A stretch of 63,725 bases of DNA, the filler included, from Octopus bimaculoides (Eukaryota): NCBI RefSeq assembly GCF_001194135.2. It is 7 parts of 7 records of this genome, joined end to end, with 100 filler letters (N's around TTAATTAATTAA, not from the genome) between each part and the next. Parts side by side here need not be neighbours in the genome. Positions count along the whole stretch, not along the records: positions 36,343 to 43,238 come from NC_069004.1; 6 more parts are not named here. One strand, written 5' to 3'. Under the pieces are notes generated by a model. It made no database searches. It was given only the letters and a program-made list of their open reading frames with translations, and was not told where the DNA came from. The translations under genes and the position numbers were made by a program. Of this stretch, positions 36,343-43,593 are shown piece by piece (position 1 is the stretch's first letter; the number at the start of each line of letters is the position of its first letter).

Positions 36343-36633
36343 GCCGAACCGCTAAGTTACGGGGACGCAATCACACCAGCATCGGTTGTCAAGCGATGTT
36401 GGGGGGACAAACACAGACACACAAACATATACACACACATACATATATATACATATATACACATATATACGACGGGCTTCTTTCAGTTTCTGTCTACCAA
36501 ATCCACTCATAAGGCTTTGGTCGGCCCAAGGCTATAGTAGAAGACACTTGCCCAAGGTGCCACGCAGTGGGACTGAACCCAGAACCATGTGGCTGGTAAG
36601 CAAGCTACTTATCACACAACCACTCCGGCGCCT
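36343..36633 (-). mobile_element. SINE copy, family of 24370-24806
   Basis: Head (reverse) ends ...ccactccggcgcct at 36633. Confidence 0.8.
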
Positions 36634-36638
36634 ATTAA

Positions 36639-36679
36639 AAAAATATGGAACGCTTCACGAATTTGCGTGTCATCCTTGC
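36639..36679 (-). pseudogene. U6: U6 snRNA 3'-terminal fragment (about nt 67-107)
   Basis: Reverse complement reads GCAAGGATGACACGCAAATTCGTGAAGCGTTCCATATTTTT, matching the conserved metazoan U6 3' end as recalled. Confidence 0.9.
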
Positions 36680-38808
36680 TGAAGAATATTGAAGCAATCG
36701 AACCTCATCAGGGTTTTTTCATACCTAGAAATTATCTTCTGATTCCTAAGCTACTATGTTTGCTCAGAATCAGCTCCTCTCACTAATTCCCGTCTTGCCT
36801 CCAACACTTCGACGACCTAATCTTTGAGAGACACGAATGCTTGGTCAATGTCAGGCTCTCTCCGACGTCCCGCGATCAGGCTGCATTGCCCAAGTGATTT
36901 GGGAGTCTTAGTCTTCATAAGTGTTCGTCTATCTCTCTCTCTACCCTACTTCCTTTCCTTCACTCACGCCTGCCCCACCCTGGTGAGCAACATCCTCTCC
37001 TCTCCGATATGGACCAGTTCCAACAGGGAGTTAGATGGCGCTCTCCAACAGTGGAGTGAATTGAGCTTGTCTGCTCCTGAGAAGGTGGAGGACAGTCGGA
37101 GTCAGAGAGCTTGGGACAACATAATTTCGAAGGCCACCTTCGACTCCTCCCTCATCCATGCGGACCAGTTTTCAAGGCGCCGCTTACTGTCTGCTAGTGC
37201 CCAAATACTCAGGTGACTGGATTGATACCATTCCTGTGGCTAACGGTGGCCTACTCAGCTTGGAGGAACTTCGTGTCTCCATTGCTCTAAGAGTGGCAGC
37301 TGACGTCTGTGTAAAAATTAACACTTCCTTCTCCAAGCCTAGATTCGAAACCGAATCTAAGAATTCTCGATCGTCCAAACCACCACGATCAACAGGCGCG
37401 AAAACAGGTTTTCTTTGTCCTGTTAAAAAGTGATTGATTATCTCCCTTTGACCAACAGGCGAAGTTCAAATGGACAGGAGCTGACGTATTTAGGTACAAA
37501 CTCTGCTGCAGTATGTCTGTCCTTCTAGCTGCCACGTTTATTATAAATACCTGTGGTCTACAGACAGACGAGAGAGAGAAAGGCCTAGCAAGCGAACGAG
37601 CAAGGTCTACGACACGATAGCTTTTCTCAGAGACCAGAGTAATGTTCGAAGTTCCACGGTAGATTACTGCCTCAGTTGAACTACGTACACACACACACAG
37701 ACGTATATTCATTTATCACTTCTACAGATGTATCATTTCTACAGATGTACCCTGTTTCTATTTCTAGCAACTCGTAGCAGTTGTCAACATTTTGCATGTA
37801 GTGAAGAATTATGTGTACCAACGACAAATTAAGTCCAGTGAATAAATGATTTTTAATTATGAATTCATTCACTCATTTGTTTGCTTCAAAGGCATACACA
37901 TTTCTTTTGCATCTGTTTACCATGATACACATCTAACCCCTACATCTACATGGGTTTGAGCTGTCTTTGTGACAAGCTCCTCGACTTCCACAGGCTTCCA
38001 CGGTTTTTCTTACCGCTTGAATGCTGGTCGCTTCGCGCGTCACACGAAGTTAGACTTTATACTCAAGAGGAATTAGGCCCGGGCAAACACCCCCTCTATC
38101 TTGGAACCATTTGGGTTGTCCAGATGTGATGGCAAAAGACCTGATGGCCTCTCCCTGTGCCCCTGGTTGAGAGGCAGATAACTTGTCTGGGAGGCCACAG
38201 TTAGCGACTCCTTTGCTTCTTACATTCTGGAAGTTGCGGCCAGGGCGAGATCCACAGCTTCTGTGGTCAAGTGGAACGAAATCCTGAAGTACCGCGATCT
38301 GTCGGCCAACTACATTTTCCATCTTGTGGTGATCGAAACGTTTGGTGGGGTCGAGCCTCTGACTGCGAGATTCCTGTCTTCACTGGCAGCTCTCCTAGCA
38401 GAGGTAACTGGTGAAGCCTCGCCATCACCCGCGGCAACGTTGTAATCGTGCTGGCCTGCCTCAATAGCTATTAGAGAGGTTTCCCAGCGCCCCAAAACTT
38501 TCTACTTGTCCGAGTAATATGATACTTTAAAAAATCATTATGGAGTTTCTATTGATNNNNNNNNNNNNNNNNNNNNNNNNNNNNNNNNNNNNNNNNNNNN
38601 NNNNNNNNNNNNNNNNNNNNNNNNNNNNNNNNNNNNNNNNNNNNNNNNNNNNNNNNNNNNNNNNNNNNNNNNNNNNNNNNNNNNNNNNNNNNNNNNNNNN
38701 NNNNNNNNNNNNNNNNNNNNNNNNNNNNNNNNNNNNNNNNNNNNNNNNNNNNNNNNNNNNNNNNNNNNNNNNNNNNNNNNNNATTGATTAAATAAAATAT
38801 ATAATTAT
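36680..38808 (+). mobile_element. 5'-truncated CRE-clade (RLE) non-LTR retrotransposon with a ~640-bp unrelated insertion (about 37320-37957)
   Basis: IPKLLCLLR...QHFDDL...QAALP, GDWIDTIPVANGGLL-LEELRVSIALR, GFHGFSY...AGRFARH and [21 protein letters not shown]...VIETFG match the CRE RT tail, zinc knuckle and RLE; aataaa near the end. Confidence 0.78.
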
Positions 38809-38823
38809 TATTAAAAAAATTTC

Positions 38824-39180
38824 AGACGCAGGAGTGGCTGTGTGGTAAGTAGCTTGCTTACTAACCACATGGTTCCGGGTTCAGTCCCACTGCGTGGCAC
38901 CTTGGGCAAGTGCCAACCAAAGCCTTGTGAGTGGATTTGGTAGACGGAAACTGAAAGAAGCCTGTCGTATATATGTATATATATATGTGTGTGTTTGTGT
39001 GTCTGTGTTTGTCCCCCTCGCCATGTTTACGTCCCCGTAACTTAGCGGTTTGGCAAAAGAGACTGATAGAATAAGTACTAGGCTTACAAAGAATAAGTCC
39101 TGGGGTCGATTTGCTCGACTTCAGGTGGTGCTCCAGCATGGCCACAGTCAAATGACTGAAACAAGTAAAAGAGTAAAAGA
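38824..39180 (+). mobile_element. SINE copy with internal deletions, family of 24370-24806
   Basis: Starts agacgcaggagtggctgtgtggtaag; ends acaagtaaaagagtaaaag. Confidence 0.8.
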
Positions 39181-39574
39181 GATACTTTGAGTGGTCCCTG
39201 TTGACTTATAGACCTTTATATACTTTGTGGCATTTGATGGTTGCAGAACGAAATACCGTGTCCCTACCAGCCATTGATACAACAATAAAACGTAATTTGA
39301 GACGCAGAGCTTTTGGCTGCTATTTCTAGAGGATTTAGAGACCACATTGAGTCGGTGACCTTGTTGTCTGGTGCTTTCGAAGTCTTTGGTTTGTTAGATG
39401 CCACGATAATCAATTGTGATTAGATGACTGGGTGAGGAAGAGATATTTCAAAGAAATGTTTCCAAGTTCGTACAAATAAAACTTAGTATTTGCTGCTAAT
39501 CACAGACTTTTTGTGGTGATTTATGCAGACAAGGAGACAGCTAATACAGAAGACTAGATTTGAGAAATATAGGT

Positions 39575-39643
<69 letters not shown>

Positions 39644-39693
39644 CGGTTAATCTTGATGCTTCACCGAAACAATATTTCTTTATTATCTCCCTT

Positions 39694-39707
39694 GTTGTCA
39701 TGACAAC
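39694..39707. promoter_or_regulatory. Perfect palindromic RFX X-box-like motif GTTGTCATGACAAC
   Basis: Matches the GTTNCCATGGNAAC-type X-box consensus; TGACTCA (AP-1) lies at 39757-39763. Motif match only. Confidence 0.3.
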
Positions 39708-40151
39708 GTCGTGCTTTTTCGCGTGCCAAGTTGGATAAAGGAAAAAAAAAAAATTGTGACTCAGAGAAGAAAATATAGGAAATATTGAAGCAAATGTACA
39801 TAAAAAAAAAACAAAGAAAAATAAAACTAAAACAAAACGCAAAAAAAACAAACAAAACAGGCAAAATACCTTAGAGAACGTTGGTCTTGCTGTTGGTGGT
39901 GGTGATGGTGGTGGTGATGGTGGTGGTGGTGGTGGTGGTTGTCTATCCCCACGCCCGCTACGAAGGTGAAACATTTTCGCTTGATGTCAAAAATTAGAAA
40001 AACTATAAATTATGTGCAAATATAATAAACTTATCGGGAATAAAATAGGAAAATAAGACAAAATAAACAAAGAAAAGGTAAACTGTGTGTATGTGTATGT
40101 GTGTATGCACTCATGTATATATATATGTATATTGGCGTGCGTGCGTATCTG

Positions 40152-40204
<53 letters not shown>

Positions 40205-40447
40205 TCCATAGCACCATATTTACGTTTCTCTCCAAGAAAATGTGTGTGCCTAGGTATCTATGTGTGGTGTGTACGTGTGTGTGTGTGTGTGGGAGAGAGA
40301 GAGAGAGAGTGCGTGTATGTATGTATGTATGTATGTATGTATGTATCTATCTATCTATCTATCTATCTATCTGCGTATATGTGTTTGCGTATGCGTGCGT
40401 GTGTATAAGACAGAGGTAGATAGATAGTTGTACATACATATATGTAT

Positions 40448-40515
<68 letters not shown>

Positions 40516-41164
40516 ACGCACACACATACATACAGGTAGAAAGATAGATAGAGAAAGGATAGATTGATAAACAGACAAATATATAGATAGACAGATAGAT
40601 AGAGAAATAGATATATATCTAGAGAGACAGATAAATGGATAGATGGTCAGATAAATAGACAAAGAAATAGATATCAAACAATTTCGAGGGCTAAACAGCA
40701 TAGCAACGAAACTTGCTCCAACGAGATCCAACAAATTTTGCTTTTTAAAAAAGCAGAAGCGAGGAGCAGAGAAGTTCAAAGTTTTGTAGGAAAAAGGATA
40801 GAACATCGTTTGAAAGCATAATGGCGGCGACAGTCAAACAGCAGAAGTTCACGTCGGACAGCCACCGAAGACGATGGCAGACAAGCAAGCAGGCGGCAGG
40901 CAGTTTGACAGACGACATCTGAGGGATGAAGAGTCGGCTGGCTGTCCAATAGATTATGAATTATAGGTCTTTTTAGCTGTCATTTGTATGGTCACCTCGC
41001 TGACACCGATTGGTTTTTAATGATGGCGTTAGCTGTAGTCTTAATGCACAGCTCTGATATAGTCCAGAACATCATCTTAACATCAAGGAAGACGGGTGTC
41101 TTCAAGAAAACAATTTCATCAACTTCAGCCGCGAAAACGGTGAAACAATGATATCATGTTGTTA

Positions 41165-41741
41165 AGATTGACAATGGCGACTAGTATGATGATGACGATG
41201 GTGGTAATGATGATGATGATGACGATGTTGATGATGAAAGTTGTGGTGATGAAGATGATGATGATGACGATGACGATGATGGAAATGATGTTCATGATAA
41301 CGACGATGGTGAAGGCAGCGGTGGTGGTGGTGGTGGTGGTGGTGGTGGACAACGACTATGATGATGATAATGATGATGATAATGATGATGATGAAGGCGG
41401 TGGTGGGATGACGATCACGACGACGCCGATGGTGATGATGACGGTGATGATGATGATGGTGATAATGTTCATGATGACGATAGTGAAGCAGTGGTGGTGA
41501 TGATGATGGTGATGATGATGATGATGACGATGACGACGTTCTCTCTCTCCTTGCACTCATTTTTTTCATCCTCTCTTCTTCCCACCCATTCTCATCATCG
41601 TCATCATCGTCATCATCATCTCCGTCATCGTCACCATTGTTCGTCGTCTTTAAAAGCAAATTATATGTTGTTCACTTGTAAGACATAATCTCCGACCCAC
41701 GTTATCATCCATACCACCGCCGCCACCACCACCACCACCGC
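41165..41741. repeat. Mixed trinucleotide microsatellite field (GAT/GAC/GGT, then CAT/CGT/CAC)
   Basis: Directly visible. Confidence 0.9.
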
Positions 41742-42522
41742 NNNNNNNNNNNNNNNNNNNNNNNNNNNNNNNNNNNNNNNNNNNNNNNNNNNNNNNNNNN
41801 NNNNNNNNNNNNNNNNNNNNNNNNNNNNNNNNNNNNNNNNNNNNNNNNNNNNNNNNNNNNNNNNNNNNNNNNNNNNNNNNNNNNNNNNNNNNNNNNNNNN
41901 NNNNNNNNNNNNNNNNNNNNNNNNNNNNNNNNNNNNNNNNNNNNNNNNNNNNNNNNNNNNNNNNNNNNNNNNNNNNNNNNNNNNNNNNNNNNNNNNNNNN
42001 NNNNNNNNNNNNNNNNNNNNNNNNCTCTCTCTCTCTCTCTCTCTCTTCTTCACTTCGTTCCAACTGTTTCAATATATCTAATTCAATCGGAAATCCCATT
42101 TAAAGAGACTGACTCCCACTACTCCTCTCTCCTCCCTCCTTGTCTAACACAGACAACACTCTCTAAAGTAGTCACTCCTTCTCTCTCTCTCACACTCTCC
42201 GCTTCCTCCCACTCTCTTTCTTTCTCTCTTTAACAGAGATATCACCGCCTCACACCCCTTACTCTTCCTATCCCCTATTCTGTTCCATTTCTTTCCCAAA
42301 TCGTTCAACGTCTCCCTCACAAACTCCTCAAATGTTCTCTCTTGGGTTATTCTCTTCTGGGTTAGGTTCCAAGCCACCACTTCCCTCAAGCTACTCCTCT
42401 GTCTGTCTCGTTATCTCTCTCGCTCTCCCTTTCTCTCACTTCTTCTATCTGTCTACCAATCTGTATTCTTTCTGTCTATGTTTCTCTCTGTCTGTCCTTT
42501 TCTGTCTGTCTGTCTCTCCCTG

Positions 42523-42580
<58 letters not shown>

Positions 42581-42595
42581 ATATANNNNNNNNNN

Positions 42596-42638
<43 letters not shown>

Positions 42639-43191
42639 GTCTATCTGTCCATCTGGCTGGTTGACTAACTGTTTTTCTTTCTCTCTGTCTGCGTCTGTCT
42701 CTCTCTGTATCGTTCTCTCTTTCTCTCCCTATATCCCAGTCTTTCTGTCTGTCTATTTCTCTCTTTATGTCTCTGTCTCACCCTCCCTCTTTCCGTCTAT
42801 CTGTTCAATTCTTTCTTTCTCTCTCTGTCTGTCAGTCTATCCGTCGCGTTCTCGGTCCCCGCCCCCTGCTCCCCCTCTCTCAGTGGTGATAAATCGTAAC
42901 TATTCACTCCTCCCCTTCGCATTACACACCCACAAACTCATTCGCTCACCTTTCCTCCCTCTCCACATTTCTCTCCCTCCCTCCTCCCTTCTCATCCGCA
43001 CTTCCATCCTTCCTCTTCCCCTTTCTTTATTTTACACCGAACCAGGTGTCCTTCGCTCTCTCACTTCACACCATATCATTTCTCTCTCTCTCTCTCTTTA
43101 ACACGCGCGTGCACACACACACACGCCTCTCCTCCCCCTCTCACTTTCTCACACACATCTCTTTCTTTCTTTGCAATCTTACATTCTCCAT

Positions 43192-43223
<32 letters not shown>

Positions 43224-43593
43224 CACACACTCTCATCTNNNNNNNNNNNNNNNNNNNNNNNNNNNNNNNNNNNNNNNNNNNNTTAATTAATTAANNNNNN
43301 NNNNNNNNNNNNNNNNNNNNNNNNNNNNNNNNNNNNNNCTAGCGCAGCTATTAAATGTTAATTGCATAAAGTAAATGCAGTAATTGATAATATTGCTGTT
43401 AACAAGCAAGTATTTCGATCTCTTAATCGATAGCTGTCACATCAAGTAGAAAAAGAGAGAGAGAGAGGGGGGGGGGATGAGATTAATGAAAGAAAGTCAG
43501 AGATGGCTAAACGAAAAAAACAAAAACACACTACAAACGGTGTTAAGGAGAAATACCCCAACGGTATCAGGTCTCTGTCTTCCAGCCATACTA

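What the first reader, a model, noticed from the sequence alone, without database searches (positions are those of the whole stretch)
36633..38820. Inverted U6 snRNA 3' end fused to the 5' junction of a CRE retrotransposon, with a candidate 12-bp TSD
Seen: TATTAAAAAAAT at 36633-36644 and again at 38809-38820 brackets a unit made of 41 nt of antisense U6 3' end, a 5'-truncated CRE element and an aataaa-containing tail. The A-run of the left repeat is also the complement of the U6 oligo(U) tail. Known: trypanosome CRE/SLACS elements target spliced-leader snRNA genes; mammalian U6-L1 chimeras carry U6 in sense; twin priming creates inverted 5' segments. Inference A: the second target strand primed on a U6 RNA tail (twin priming in trans). 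Inference B: a CRE family that inserts site-specifically into U6 genes. The U6 piece looks unmutated while the CRE ORF is decayed, which either model must explain.
Basis: partly seen in the sequence, partly recalled or inferred. Interest (0 to 1): 0.75.

Follow-up and report, generated by a model that had tools for sequence, protein, structure and literature searches.

The report
U6 snRNA fragment fused to octopus SINE
A 43-base copy of the end of the U6 spliceosomal RNA sits in octopus DNA between a SINE repeat and a decayed R2-like jumping gene; it is most likely a by-product of reverse transcriptase switching templates, a kind of event already known in vertebrates.

Summary
The raw observation holds. 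TATTAAAAAAAT occurs exactly twice. The last 36 nt of U6 plus seven U lie in antisense at 36637-36679. They are joined through a 4-nt microhomology (TTGC) to a 5'-truncated, decayed retroelement on the + strand.

The element is an R2-like non-LTR retrotransposon with a restriction-like endonuclease. The "CRE" label could not be verified.

On the minus strand the U6 piece is in sense, 3 nt upstream of a full-length SINE. That is the layout of the 5'-truncated U6/SINE template-switch chimeras described for platypus, lizard and opossum.

Best reading (about 0.5): a U6-SINE chimera landed in an older element, and the 12-mer is coincidence, made of the 3'UTR end plus poly(A) on the right and SINE base 1, three extra bases and the U-tail on the left.

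It needs a target exactly between two SINE heads and an element that was already dead on arrival. That mechanism is already published for human L1.

Inference B (U6-gene targeting) is not supported.

The parts
36343..36633 (-). Octopus SINE copy. It is 5'-complete, with head base A1 as the complement of T36633. Its 3' part is cut off by the piece edge.
   Evidence: Inverted repeat with the right SINE (I1/I2/I10). The 5' end consensus AGGCGCAGGAGTGG comes from about 10 other copies. The copy is 5.2% from a crude consensus.
36633..36644 (+). Left TATTAAAAAAAT. It is made of SINE base 1 (T), three extra bases (ATT), A7 (the complement of the U6 U-tail) and T (the complement of the U6 A before the U-run).
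36637..36679 (-). U6 snRNA 3' end: a 36-nt body plus 7 U. In human numbering this is about nt 67-107. It is 5'-truncated.
   Evidence: Rfam RF00026 model positions 65-105, 31.5 bits, no mismatch at conserved positions.
36676..36679 (.). TTGC microhomology, shared by antisense U6 (…CCTTGC|GCAGG) and the element (…CAGTTGC|TGAAAA).
   Evidence: Window sequence compared with L001 9672-9690. The U6 continuation comes from the Rfam consensus and from general knowledge of U6.
36676..37309 (+). Decayed R2-like (RLE-type) non-LTR element: the linker region downstream of the RT. It is 5'-truncated at 36676.
   Evidence: 77-82% nucleotide identity to L001 9672-10161. tblastn hits to P0002, P0003 and P0006 with stops and frame changes.
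37310..37948 (.). 639-bp insert of unknown origin that interrupts the element between ...ADVCV and the CCHC motif.
   Evidence: Absent from L001 (10161|10162 are contiguous) and from all protein relatives. It is not a repeat in L001-L003.
37949..38517 (+). CCHC knuckle (degenerate) and PD-(D/E)XK restriction-like endonuclease domain (KRPDG…WEATV…KY), ending in the stop codon TAA at 38515-38517.
   Evidence: 61% amino-acid identity to O. vulgaris P0001, with 3 in-frame stops. Invariant columns.
38518..38812 (+). 3'UTR, interrupted by the assembly gap at 38557-38782. The contig ends share ATTGAT. AATAAA is at 38791-38796.
38809..38820 (+). Right TATTAAAAAAAT. It is either the last 4 nt of the UTR, an A7 poly(A) remnant (38813-38819) and T, or the 3' copy of a TSD.
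38824..39186 (+). Second Octopus SINE copy. It is full length with the tail …CAAGTAAAAGAGTAAAAGAG, and its head lies 3 nt (TTC) after the right 12-mer.
   Evidence: It is 4.2% from the consensus. It has no clear TSD of its own.

Best explanation
Read on the minus strand, the locus is 5'-[old R2-like element, antisense]-U6 nt ~67-107-U7-AAU-[full-length SINE]-3'.

The most likely history has four steps:
1. An R2-like, poly(A)-tailed non-LTR element inserted long ago and decayed in place.
2. Much later a SINE RNA was reverse-transcribed at a nick to the left of the piece by its partner LINE. The short SINE TSDs and repeat tail suggest a stringent type.
3. On reaching the SINE's 5' end, the RT added about 3 nt and jumped to the 3' oligo(U) end of a U6 snRNA. 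It copied 43 nt.
4. The cDNA end was then joined to the upstream target, inside the old element, through 4 nt of microhomology (GCAA/TTGC).

A second SINE inserted independently just beyond the old element's poly(A).

On this reading the 12-mer 'TSD' is a coincidence. The left copy is SINE base 1, 3 extra nt, the U-tail and an A. The right copy is the last 4 nt of the UTR, an A7 poly(A) remnant and a T.

Shown: the orientations, the adjacency, the 5'-complete SINE, the 3'-complete U6, the microhomology and the relative ages.

Inferred: that U6 and the SINE arrived in one event, and that the element was already in place.
For: - U6 and the left SINE are on the same strand, 3 nt apart. The U6 3' end is intact and the SINE starts at consensus base 1.
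- Precedent (PMC4476161). In platypus almost all U6/L2 chimeras carry a 5'-truncated U6 and TSDs of only 1-9 bp. U6/Mon-1, six U6/AnolisSINE2 and an opossum 5'-truncated U6/RTESINE1 chimera are also described.
- This SINE shows short TSDs of 6-8 nt. RTE and Dong are the candidate active LINEs in Octopus (PMC9115989).
- The ages fit without extra assumptions. The element has at least 5 stops and at least 3 frameshifts, and is 77-82% identical to its paralogue, which suggests roughly 10% decay. The SINEs are 4-5% from consensus. U6 shows 0 changes in 43 nt: P is about 0.1 at 5% divergence and about 0.01 at 10%.
- The family looks old and inactive. Only one decayed Octopus protein hit was found, and the two copies share no lesions.
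- The right A7 sits where relatives carry their poly(A) tail.
Against: - The exact 12/12 direct repeat is unlikely by chance, at about 0.2-0.7%. It lies precisely at the outer edge of the U-tail and at the expected 3' end of the element.
- The right SINE head only 3 nt beyond it is a second coincidence.
- The chimera's own TSD and the predicted continuation of the element to the left of the SINE cannot be seen, because the piece ends inside the SINE.
- Three unexplained bases lie between the U-tail and the SINE.
- None of about 10 other SINE copies carries U6, so this is a single case.
Confidence: 0.5

Rival explanations
1. Reader's inference A, refined. The 12-mer is a true TSD of a single event.
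- A staggered break opened in the 15-nt spacer between two head-to-head SINEs.
- The bottom-strand 3' end (…TTTTTTTAATA-3') primed at the UTR/poly(A) boundary of a polyadenylated transcript from an already dead R2-like copy.
- The top-strand 3' end (…AAAAAAAT-3') annealed to the AUUUUUUU-3' end of U6 and primed a second cDNA (twin priming in trans).
- The two cDNAs were then joined at the TTGC microhomology.
For: - The 12-nt direct repeat is exact and is the only such pair.
- The target end has 8-nt complementarity to the U6 tail, and the inversion joint has a 4-nt microhomology.
- The right copy sits at the family-typical 3' end, 16 nt after AATAAA.
- The gap is probably of zero length.
- Inverted snRNA, 5S and tRNA/L1 chimeras attributed to twin priming are published (PMC4476161; PMC11838501).
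- The reconstructed empty site is a 290-nt-arm quasi-palindrome with a 15-nt spacer (hairpin dG -252 kcal/mol). Such repeats are known fragile sites (PMC7999016; PMC10164571).
- An unmutated U6 is expected if the event is young.
Against: - A target exactly between two SINE heads has a prior of about 1e-6 to 1e-7 unless palindrome centres are hot spots for such events. That is unproven.
- The insertion would have to be younger than SINEs that are 4-5% diverged. Most of the element's lesions and the 639-bp insert would then predate it, so a dead copy's RNA was mobilised in trans. No active family member is in evidence.
- There is no poly(A) beyond the A7.
- In published twin-primed chimeras the snRNA is 3'-truncated, and U6 is almost always in sense.
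Confidence: 0.22
2. Two or more independent insertions that happen to be adjacent. For example, a 5'-truncated U6 retropseudogene inserted first and a SINE later inserted at its T-run, or the reverse order.
For: - Three extra bases lie at the U6/SINE joint.
- Doucet et al. interpret one U6atac/Alu pair with an extra A and no TSD in this way.
- SINE density is high, at about one per 6 kb.
Against: - It requires base-precise adjacency of a full SINE 5' end to the U6 3' end.
- Solitary U6 retrocopies are not expected where LINEs are of the stringent type.
Confidence: 0.08
3. One reading: the element family inserts site-specifically into U6 genes near nt 67, and the U6 piece is the remnant of a target gene.
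For: - RLE-type clades are often target-specific; Utopia targets U2 genes (PMC4640811).
- The 3' junction lies next to an assembly gap.
Against: - No U6 or other Rfam hit lies around the O. vulgaris paralogue or three relatives.
- Two of those relatives end in poly(A) followed by unrelated flank.
- Contig B shows the UTR end and A7 followed by a SINE, not U6 nt 1-66.
- The gap is probably of zero length.
- The paralogue runs straight through the junction point.
Confidence: 0.03
4. Assembly artefact: a chimeric contig or scaffold mis-join at high-copy SINEs, so that the right 12-mer, or the SINE/U6 joint, is not real.
For: - This is a short-read style scaffold with three estimated gaps.
- The right 12-mer lies in a different contig, only 26 nt from its start.
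- Both flanks are high-copy repeats.
Against: - The U6/element and SINE/U6 joints lie inside one contig, in unique sequence.
- The contig ends overlap by ATTGAT, and the joined UTR fits the family.
Confidence: 0.05

Closest known systems
Sense U6/SINE and U6/LINE template-switch chimeras of stringent LINE systems: platypus U6/L2 and U6/Mon-1, lizard U6/AnolisSINE2, opossum U6/RTE_Mdo and U6/RTESINE1 (Doucet et al. 2015, PMC4476161)
   Same: U6 lies upstream of, and in the same orientation as, the retroposon. The joint is at the U6 oligo(U) end. U6 is 5'-truncated. Small TSDs are expected for the partner system.
   Different: The host is a mollusc. Three extra bases lie at the joint. The chimera's TSD cannot be seen. 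The insertion lies inside an older R2-like element. It is a single case.
Inverted snRNA, 5S and tRNA/L1 chimeras attributed to twin priming (Doucet et al. 2015; PMC11838501; Ostertag & Kazazian 2001, cited there)
   Same: A small RNA lies in antisense at the 5' junction of a 5'-truncated LINE. The RNA is complementary to the target end. There is microhomology at the inversion joint. A candidate TSD encloses both.
   Different: Here U6 keeps its whole 3' end and would be primed on the U-tail; in the published cases the snRNA is 3'-truncated. The LINE is RLE-type and decayed, not an L1. The putative empty site is a SINE quasi-palindrome.
R2 and other restriction-like-endonuclease non-LTR retrotransposons (CRE, R2, R4/Dong, NeSL/Utopia, HERO)
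   Same: The domain order is RT, then a CCHC knuckle, then a PD-(D/E)XK nuclease, with no APE domain. R2 proteins are the nearest solved structures.
   Different: The relatives have poly(A) tails and no detectable specific target. The clade is unresolved. The window copy lacks the RT and is dead.

Membership tests
U6 spliceosomal snRNA (Rfam RF00026) | Sequence match to the conserved 3' domain ending in oligo(U) | tested here: met
   Model positions 65-105 are aligned and all conserved positions are identical. The T-run is 7 long.
U6 spliceosomal snRNA (Rfam RF00026) | Full-length RNA or gene (5' stem-loop, ACAGAGA box, score at or above gathering) | tested here: not met
   Only the last ~41-43 nt are present. 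The score is 31.5 bits against a gathering score of 44. It is a fragment, not a gene.
RLE-type non-LTR retrotransposons (R2 supergroup) | C-terminal CCHC motif plus a PD-(D/E)XK motif (RPD…D/E-x-T/V…K) | tested here: met
   The window reads [11 protein letters not shown]…WEATV…KY. Invariant columns are G-x-R-P-D-G, D/T and K in the alignments. tblastn results are. The CCHC motif is degenerate in the window copy.
RLE-type non-LTR retrotransposons (R2 supergroup) | Reverse transcriptase domain upstream of the nuclease, and no APE domain | tested here: met
   Met for the family, not for the window copy, which is 5'-truncated. P0006 hits RVT_1 at 88.7 bits and has no other Pfam domain. The L001 paralogue has YLDD upstream. 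R2 proteins are the best PDB sequence hits and the best fold hits (though the model is poor at pLDDT 39.5).
CRE clade (CRE1/CRE2/SLACS/CZAR and Repbase CRE group) | RT phylogeny groups with CRE reference elements | not testable with these tools
CRE clade (CRE1/CRE2/SLACS/CZAR and Repbase CRE group) | Site-specific insertion into spliced-leader or other small-RNA genes | tested here: not met
   There are no Rfam hits in the flanks of L001, L004, L005 or L006. The sample is small, at 4 copies.
Sense U6 template-switch chimera | U6 lies 5' of, and co-oriented with, the retroposon; the joint is at the U6 3' oligo(U) end | tested here: met
   The minus strand reads …CCATATTTTTTT-AAT-AGGCGCCGGAGTGG…. 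The SINE starts at consensus base 1.
Sense U6 template-switch chimera | One TSD encloses U6 plus the retroposon | not testable with these tools
   The SINE tail and the left flank lie outside the piece.
Twin-primed inverted snRNA/LINE chimera | snRNA in antisense at the 5' end of a 5'-truncated LINE, with complementarity to the target end | tested here: met
   U6 lies in antisense next to the truncated element. The 8 nt AAAAAAAT are complementary to AUUUUUUU-3'.
Twin-primed inverted snRNA/LINE chimera | A single TSD encloses both parts, confirmed by an empty site | tested here: inconclusive
   A 12/12 direct repeat is present. However, the right copy lies across a gap and can equally be read as UTR end plus poly(A). 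The implied empty site is a SINE-SINE quasi-palindrome. No orthologue could be reached.

The most novel reading that the evidence does not exclude
The 12-mer is a true TSD. A head-to-head SINE pair with a 15-nt spacer, which is a fragile quasi-palindrome, broke at its centre. Both 12-nt 3' overhangs then primed reverse transcription on whatever RNA they could pair with. One primed on the oligo(U) tail of U6. The other primed at the UTR/poly(A) boundary of a transcript from a dead R2-like element. The resulting 2.2-kb filler pushed the arms apart and stabilised the palindrome. This would be a retro-mediated repair of a palindrome centre, and the first tail-primed inverted U6 chimera, in a mollusc.
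Probability: 0.18. Interest if true: 0.6.

Novelty: new member of a known kind. Interest (0 to 1): 0.3.

Why it matters
Either reading shows that U6 snRNA is captured by reverse transcriptases in a cephalopod. In the library searched, U6 chimeras are documented only for vertebrates and one fungus.

If the sense U6-SINE reading is right, it is a marker that the octopus SINE's partner LINE switches templates as L2 and RTE do in vertebrates.

If the TSD reading is right, it would link palindrome fragility to RT-mediated repair.

It is a single locus without functional consequence, so the value is as a lead for a genome-wide census rather than as a discovery in itself.

Tried and rejected
Steps that led nowhere:
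- Exact look-up of 10 window ORFs found none in the protein collection, so the window's own locus could not be fetched.
- No plausible exon lies in 39060-43238 to anchor an orthologous locus.
- Two metagenome scans, one for the U6/element joint and one for the SINE core, gave 0 hits.
- Pfam on six-frame translations of the window gave nothing.
- The 3'UTR of the window copy is not alignable to the O. vulgaris paralogue; the score is below the shuffled mean. The family's 3' end had to be inferred from distant relatives.
- Neither the ends nor a TSD could be defined for the L001 paralogue.
- ARAGORN calls no tRNA in the SINE heads. 'tRNA-derived' therefore rests on reading the A/B-box-like motifs and on literature recalled from memory.
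- The AlphaFold model of P0006 was poor (pLDDT 39.5). The fold hits to R2 are supportive only.

Ideas considered and rejected:
- The two SINEs and the 12-mers as parts of one duplication. The 12-mers are direct while the SINEs are inverted.
- SINE-SINE inversion as an explanation. It would leave the same adjacencies.
- Later insertion of both SINEs exactly at the TSD edges. This needs two positional coincidences, and an unmutated U6 at about 10% divergence has P of about 0.01.
- The miRNA and snoRNA Rfam hits in 39500-41700. These are microsatellite artefacts.
Full report
**What is there**

The piece is cephalopod DNA. The best protein hit of its only coding remnant is an Octopus vulgaris hypothetical protein. 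Its flanking repeats recur in three O. vulgaris loci fetched for comparison.

- TATTAAAAAAAT is at 36633-36644 and 38809-38820. These are the only two matches even with one mismatch allowed.
- On the minus strand, 36639-36679 aligns to positions 65-105 of the Rfam U6 model with every conserved position identical. The T-run is seven long, so the U6-derived stretch is 36637-36679.
- The score of 31.5 bits is below the gathering score only because it is a fragment.

**The element**

From 36676 a decayed ORF runs on the + strand to a TAA at 38515-38517. It aligns at 77-85% nucleotide identity to a paralogue in O. vulgaris (L001 9672-10729). That paralogue continues upstream of the junction into an RT domain with YLDD. 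The window copy is therefore truly 5'-truncated at 36676.

The junction has a 4-nt microhomology.
- Antisense U6 reads …CCTTGC|GCAGG.
- The element reads …CAGTTGC|TGAAAA.
- The window reads …CCTTGCTGAAGA, so the shared TTGC is at 36676-36679.

The protein part is the linker plus a degenerate CCHC knuckle plus a PD-(D/E)XK nuclease (CDGKRPDG…WEATV…KY).
- A near full-length relative (P0006, 842 aa) has RVT_1 and no other Pfam domain.
- Its best solved relatives by sequence and by fold are R2 proteins. The model was poor.
- The element is thus an R2-like, RLE-type non-LTR retrotransposon.
- The 'CRE' label could not be tested. The one CRE-like trait that could be tested, small-RNA-gene targeting, was not seen in four copies.

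The window copy carries at least 5 premature stops, at least 3 frame changes and a 639-bp foreign insert at 37310-37948. None of these lesions is shared with the L001 copy.

**The gap**

- The stop codon lies upstream of the gap, so the reading frame is not at issue.
- The two contig ends share an exact ATTGAT (…TTTCTATTGAT / ATTGATTAAATAAAA). P is about 5e-4 by shuffling.
- Collapsing the gap gives a 63-nt 3'UTR with AATAAA (38791-96) 16 nt before the A7 (38813-19).
- Distant relatives end the same way. L004 has a 103-nt UTR, AATAAA and A16. L005 has a 68-nt UTR and A8.
- Continuity is therefore likely but unproven.

Both 12-mers abut the 5' heads of two inverted copies of an abundant Octopus SINE. 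One lies at 36343-36633 on the minus strand and one at 38824-39186 on the plus strand (I1/I2/I10).
- Ten further copies define the SINE 5' end as AGGCGCAGGAGTGG….
- T36633, the first base of the left 12-mer, is therefore SINE base 1.
- Only ATT separates the SINE head from the A7.
- On the right, only TTC separates the 12-mer from the other SINE head.
- The two copies are 5.2% and 4.2% from a crude consensus.
- The minus strand thus reads …U6(67-107)-U7-AAT-SINE(full length): U6 in sense, directly upstream of a SINE.

**Two competing readings**

(i) Sense template-switch chimera.
- While copying a SINE RNA, the partner LINE's RT reached the 5' end, added about 3 nt, jumped to the U6 oligo(U) end and copied 43 nt.
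- The cDNA was then joined by microhomology inside an older element that was already in place.
- The 12-mer is then coincidence. The left copy is SINE base 1, ATT and the U-tail complement. The right copy is the UTR end, a poly(A) remnant and a T.

- The 12-mer is a TSD.
- The top-strand end …AAAAAAAT-3' primed on U6 AUUUUUUU-3' (8 nt of complementarity).
- The bottom strand primed on the element RNA.
- The two cDNAs met at TTGC.

**Literature**

Reading (ii) is not new as a mechanism.
- Doucet et al. 2015 describe inverted U5, U1, U2 and one U6/L1 chimera and propose exactly twin priming on the snRNA, with complementarity at the junction (PMC4476161).
- A 2025 preprint extends this to 5S and tRNA. 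It notes that U6 in L1 chimeras is consistently full length and in sense (PMC11838501).

Reading (i) has closer precedent.
- In platypus almost all U6/L2 chimeras carry a 5'-truncated U6 with TSDs of 1-9 bp.
- U6/Mon-1, six U6/AnolisSINE2 and an opossum 5'-truncated U6/RTESINE1 chimera are reported.
- The octopus SINE shows short TSDs of 6-8 nt. RTE and Dong are the candidate active LINEs in Octopus (PMC9115989).

**Weighing**

- Under (i), two coincidences are needed. One is the 12-mer. It is about 0.2% from base composition, and it is at most 0.7% empirically for A6-containing 12-mers recurring within 3 kb. The other is a SINE head 3 nt past the poly(A), about 1e-3 at the observed density of one SINE per ~6 kb.
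- Under (ii), the target must be the 15-nt spacer between two SINE heads. That is also about 1e-6 to 1e-7, unless such a site is a hot spot.
- The reconstructed empty site would be a quasi-palindrome with 290-nt arms and a 15-nt spacer (single-strand hairpin dG -252 kcal/mol, 217 pairs across the centre). Inverted repeats with ~12-bp spacers are known fragile sites (PMC7999016; PMC10164571). A hot-spot effect is therefore conceivable but unproven for retro-insertion.
- Ages favour (i). The element looks about 10% decayed, the SINEs 4-5%, and U6 shows 0 changes in 43 nt (P about 0.1 at 5% divergence and about 0.01 at 10%).
- Under (ii), the event must post-date both SINEs. The element RNA must then have come from an already dead copy mobilised in trans.
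- No active family member is in evidence. Only one decayed Octopus protein was found in two searches.
- Later insertion of both SINEs at the TSD edges is rejected on the same numbers.

I put (i) at about 0.5 and (ii) at about 0.2. The other readings get about 0.08 for independent adjacent insertions, 0.03 for U6-gene targeting and 0.05 for an assembly artefact.

**Verdict**

- Either way the locus is a one-off chimeric retrocopy of a kind already described in vertebrates.
- It is new only in host phylum, in the partner (an octopus SINE, or an RLE-type element) and, under reading (ii), in tail-priming on U6.
- The decisive data are the sequence to the left of 36343, closure of the gap, and an orthologous empty site.

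Noticed in passing
window 37310-37948: A 639-bp insert interrupts the element ORF between …ADVCV and the CCHC motif. It is absent from the O. vulgaris paralogue and from all protein relatives. It matches no repeat in 61 kb of O. vulgaris DNA. Both edges (TCTGTGTA / TCTACAT) resemble the uninterrupted TATGCAC of the paralogue, which may be a decayed ~7-nt TSD.
   Followed up: partly
window 38551-38556 and 38783-38788: The contig ends on both sides of the 226-N gap share an exact ATTGAT. This suggests that the 'gap' is an unmerged overlap of zero or negative length.
   Followed up: yes
window 39560-43238: The rest of the piece is almost entirely microsatellites: (GA)n, (GGT)n, (CTAT)n, (CA)n, and inverted (GAT)n/(ATC)n around 41160-41640. 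It has two more gaps. These repeats produce spurious sub-threshold miRNA and snoRNA Rfam hits (mir-598, mir-297 and others). No credible ORF is present.
   Followed up: partly
L002 18201-18328 (- strand), O. vulgaris OX597836.1: There is a U4 snRNA hit above Rfam's gathering score (69.8 bits). By eye it is a U4 5' portion followed by (ATA)n and then another abundant octopus repeat. It may be a further snRNA-containing retro-chimera, or a U4-headed repeat.
   Followed up: no
L003 1286-2918 and 13372-14637: Two more head-to-head SINE(-)/SINE(+) pairs were found, with spacers of 635 and 381 bp of ordinary sequence. Given the SINE density this is only marginally more than expected. No TSD-like repeats were found at the spacer ends, apart from a weak 11/15 match in the second pair.
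   Followed up: partly
window 38824-39200: The right SINE copy has no recognisable TSD between its 5' flank (…AAAAAAATTTC) and its 3' flank (ATACTTTGAG…). Two better-preserved O. vulgaris copies show TSDs of 6-8 nt. The right copy also carries two internal deletions relative to the consensus.
   Followed up: partly
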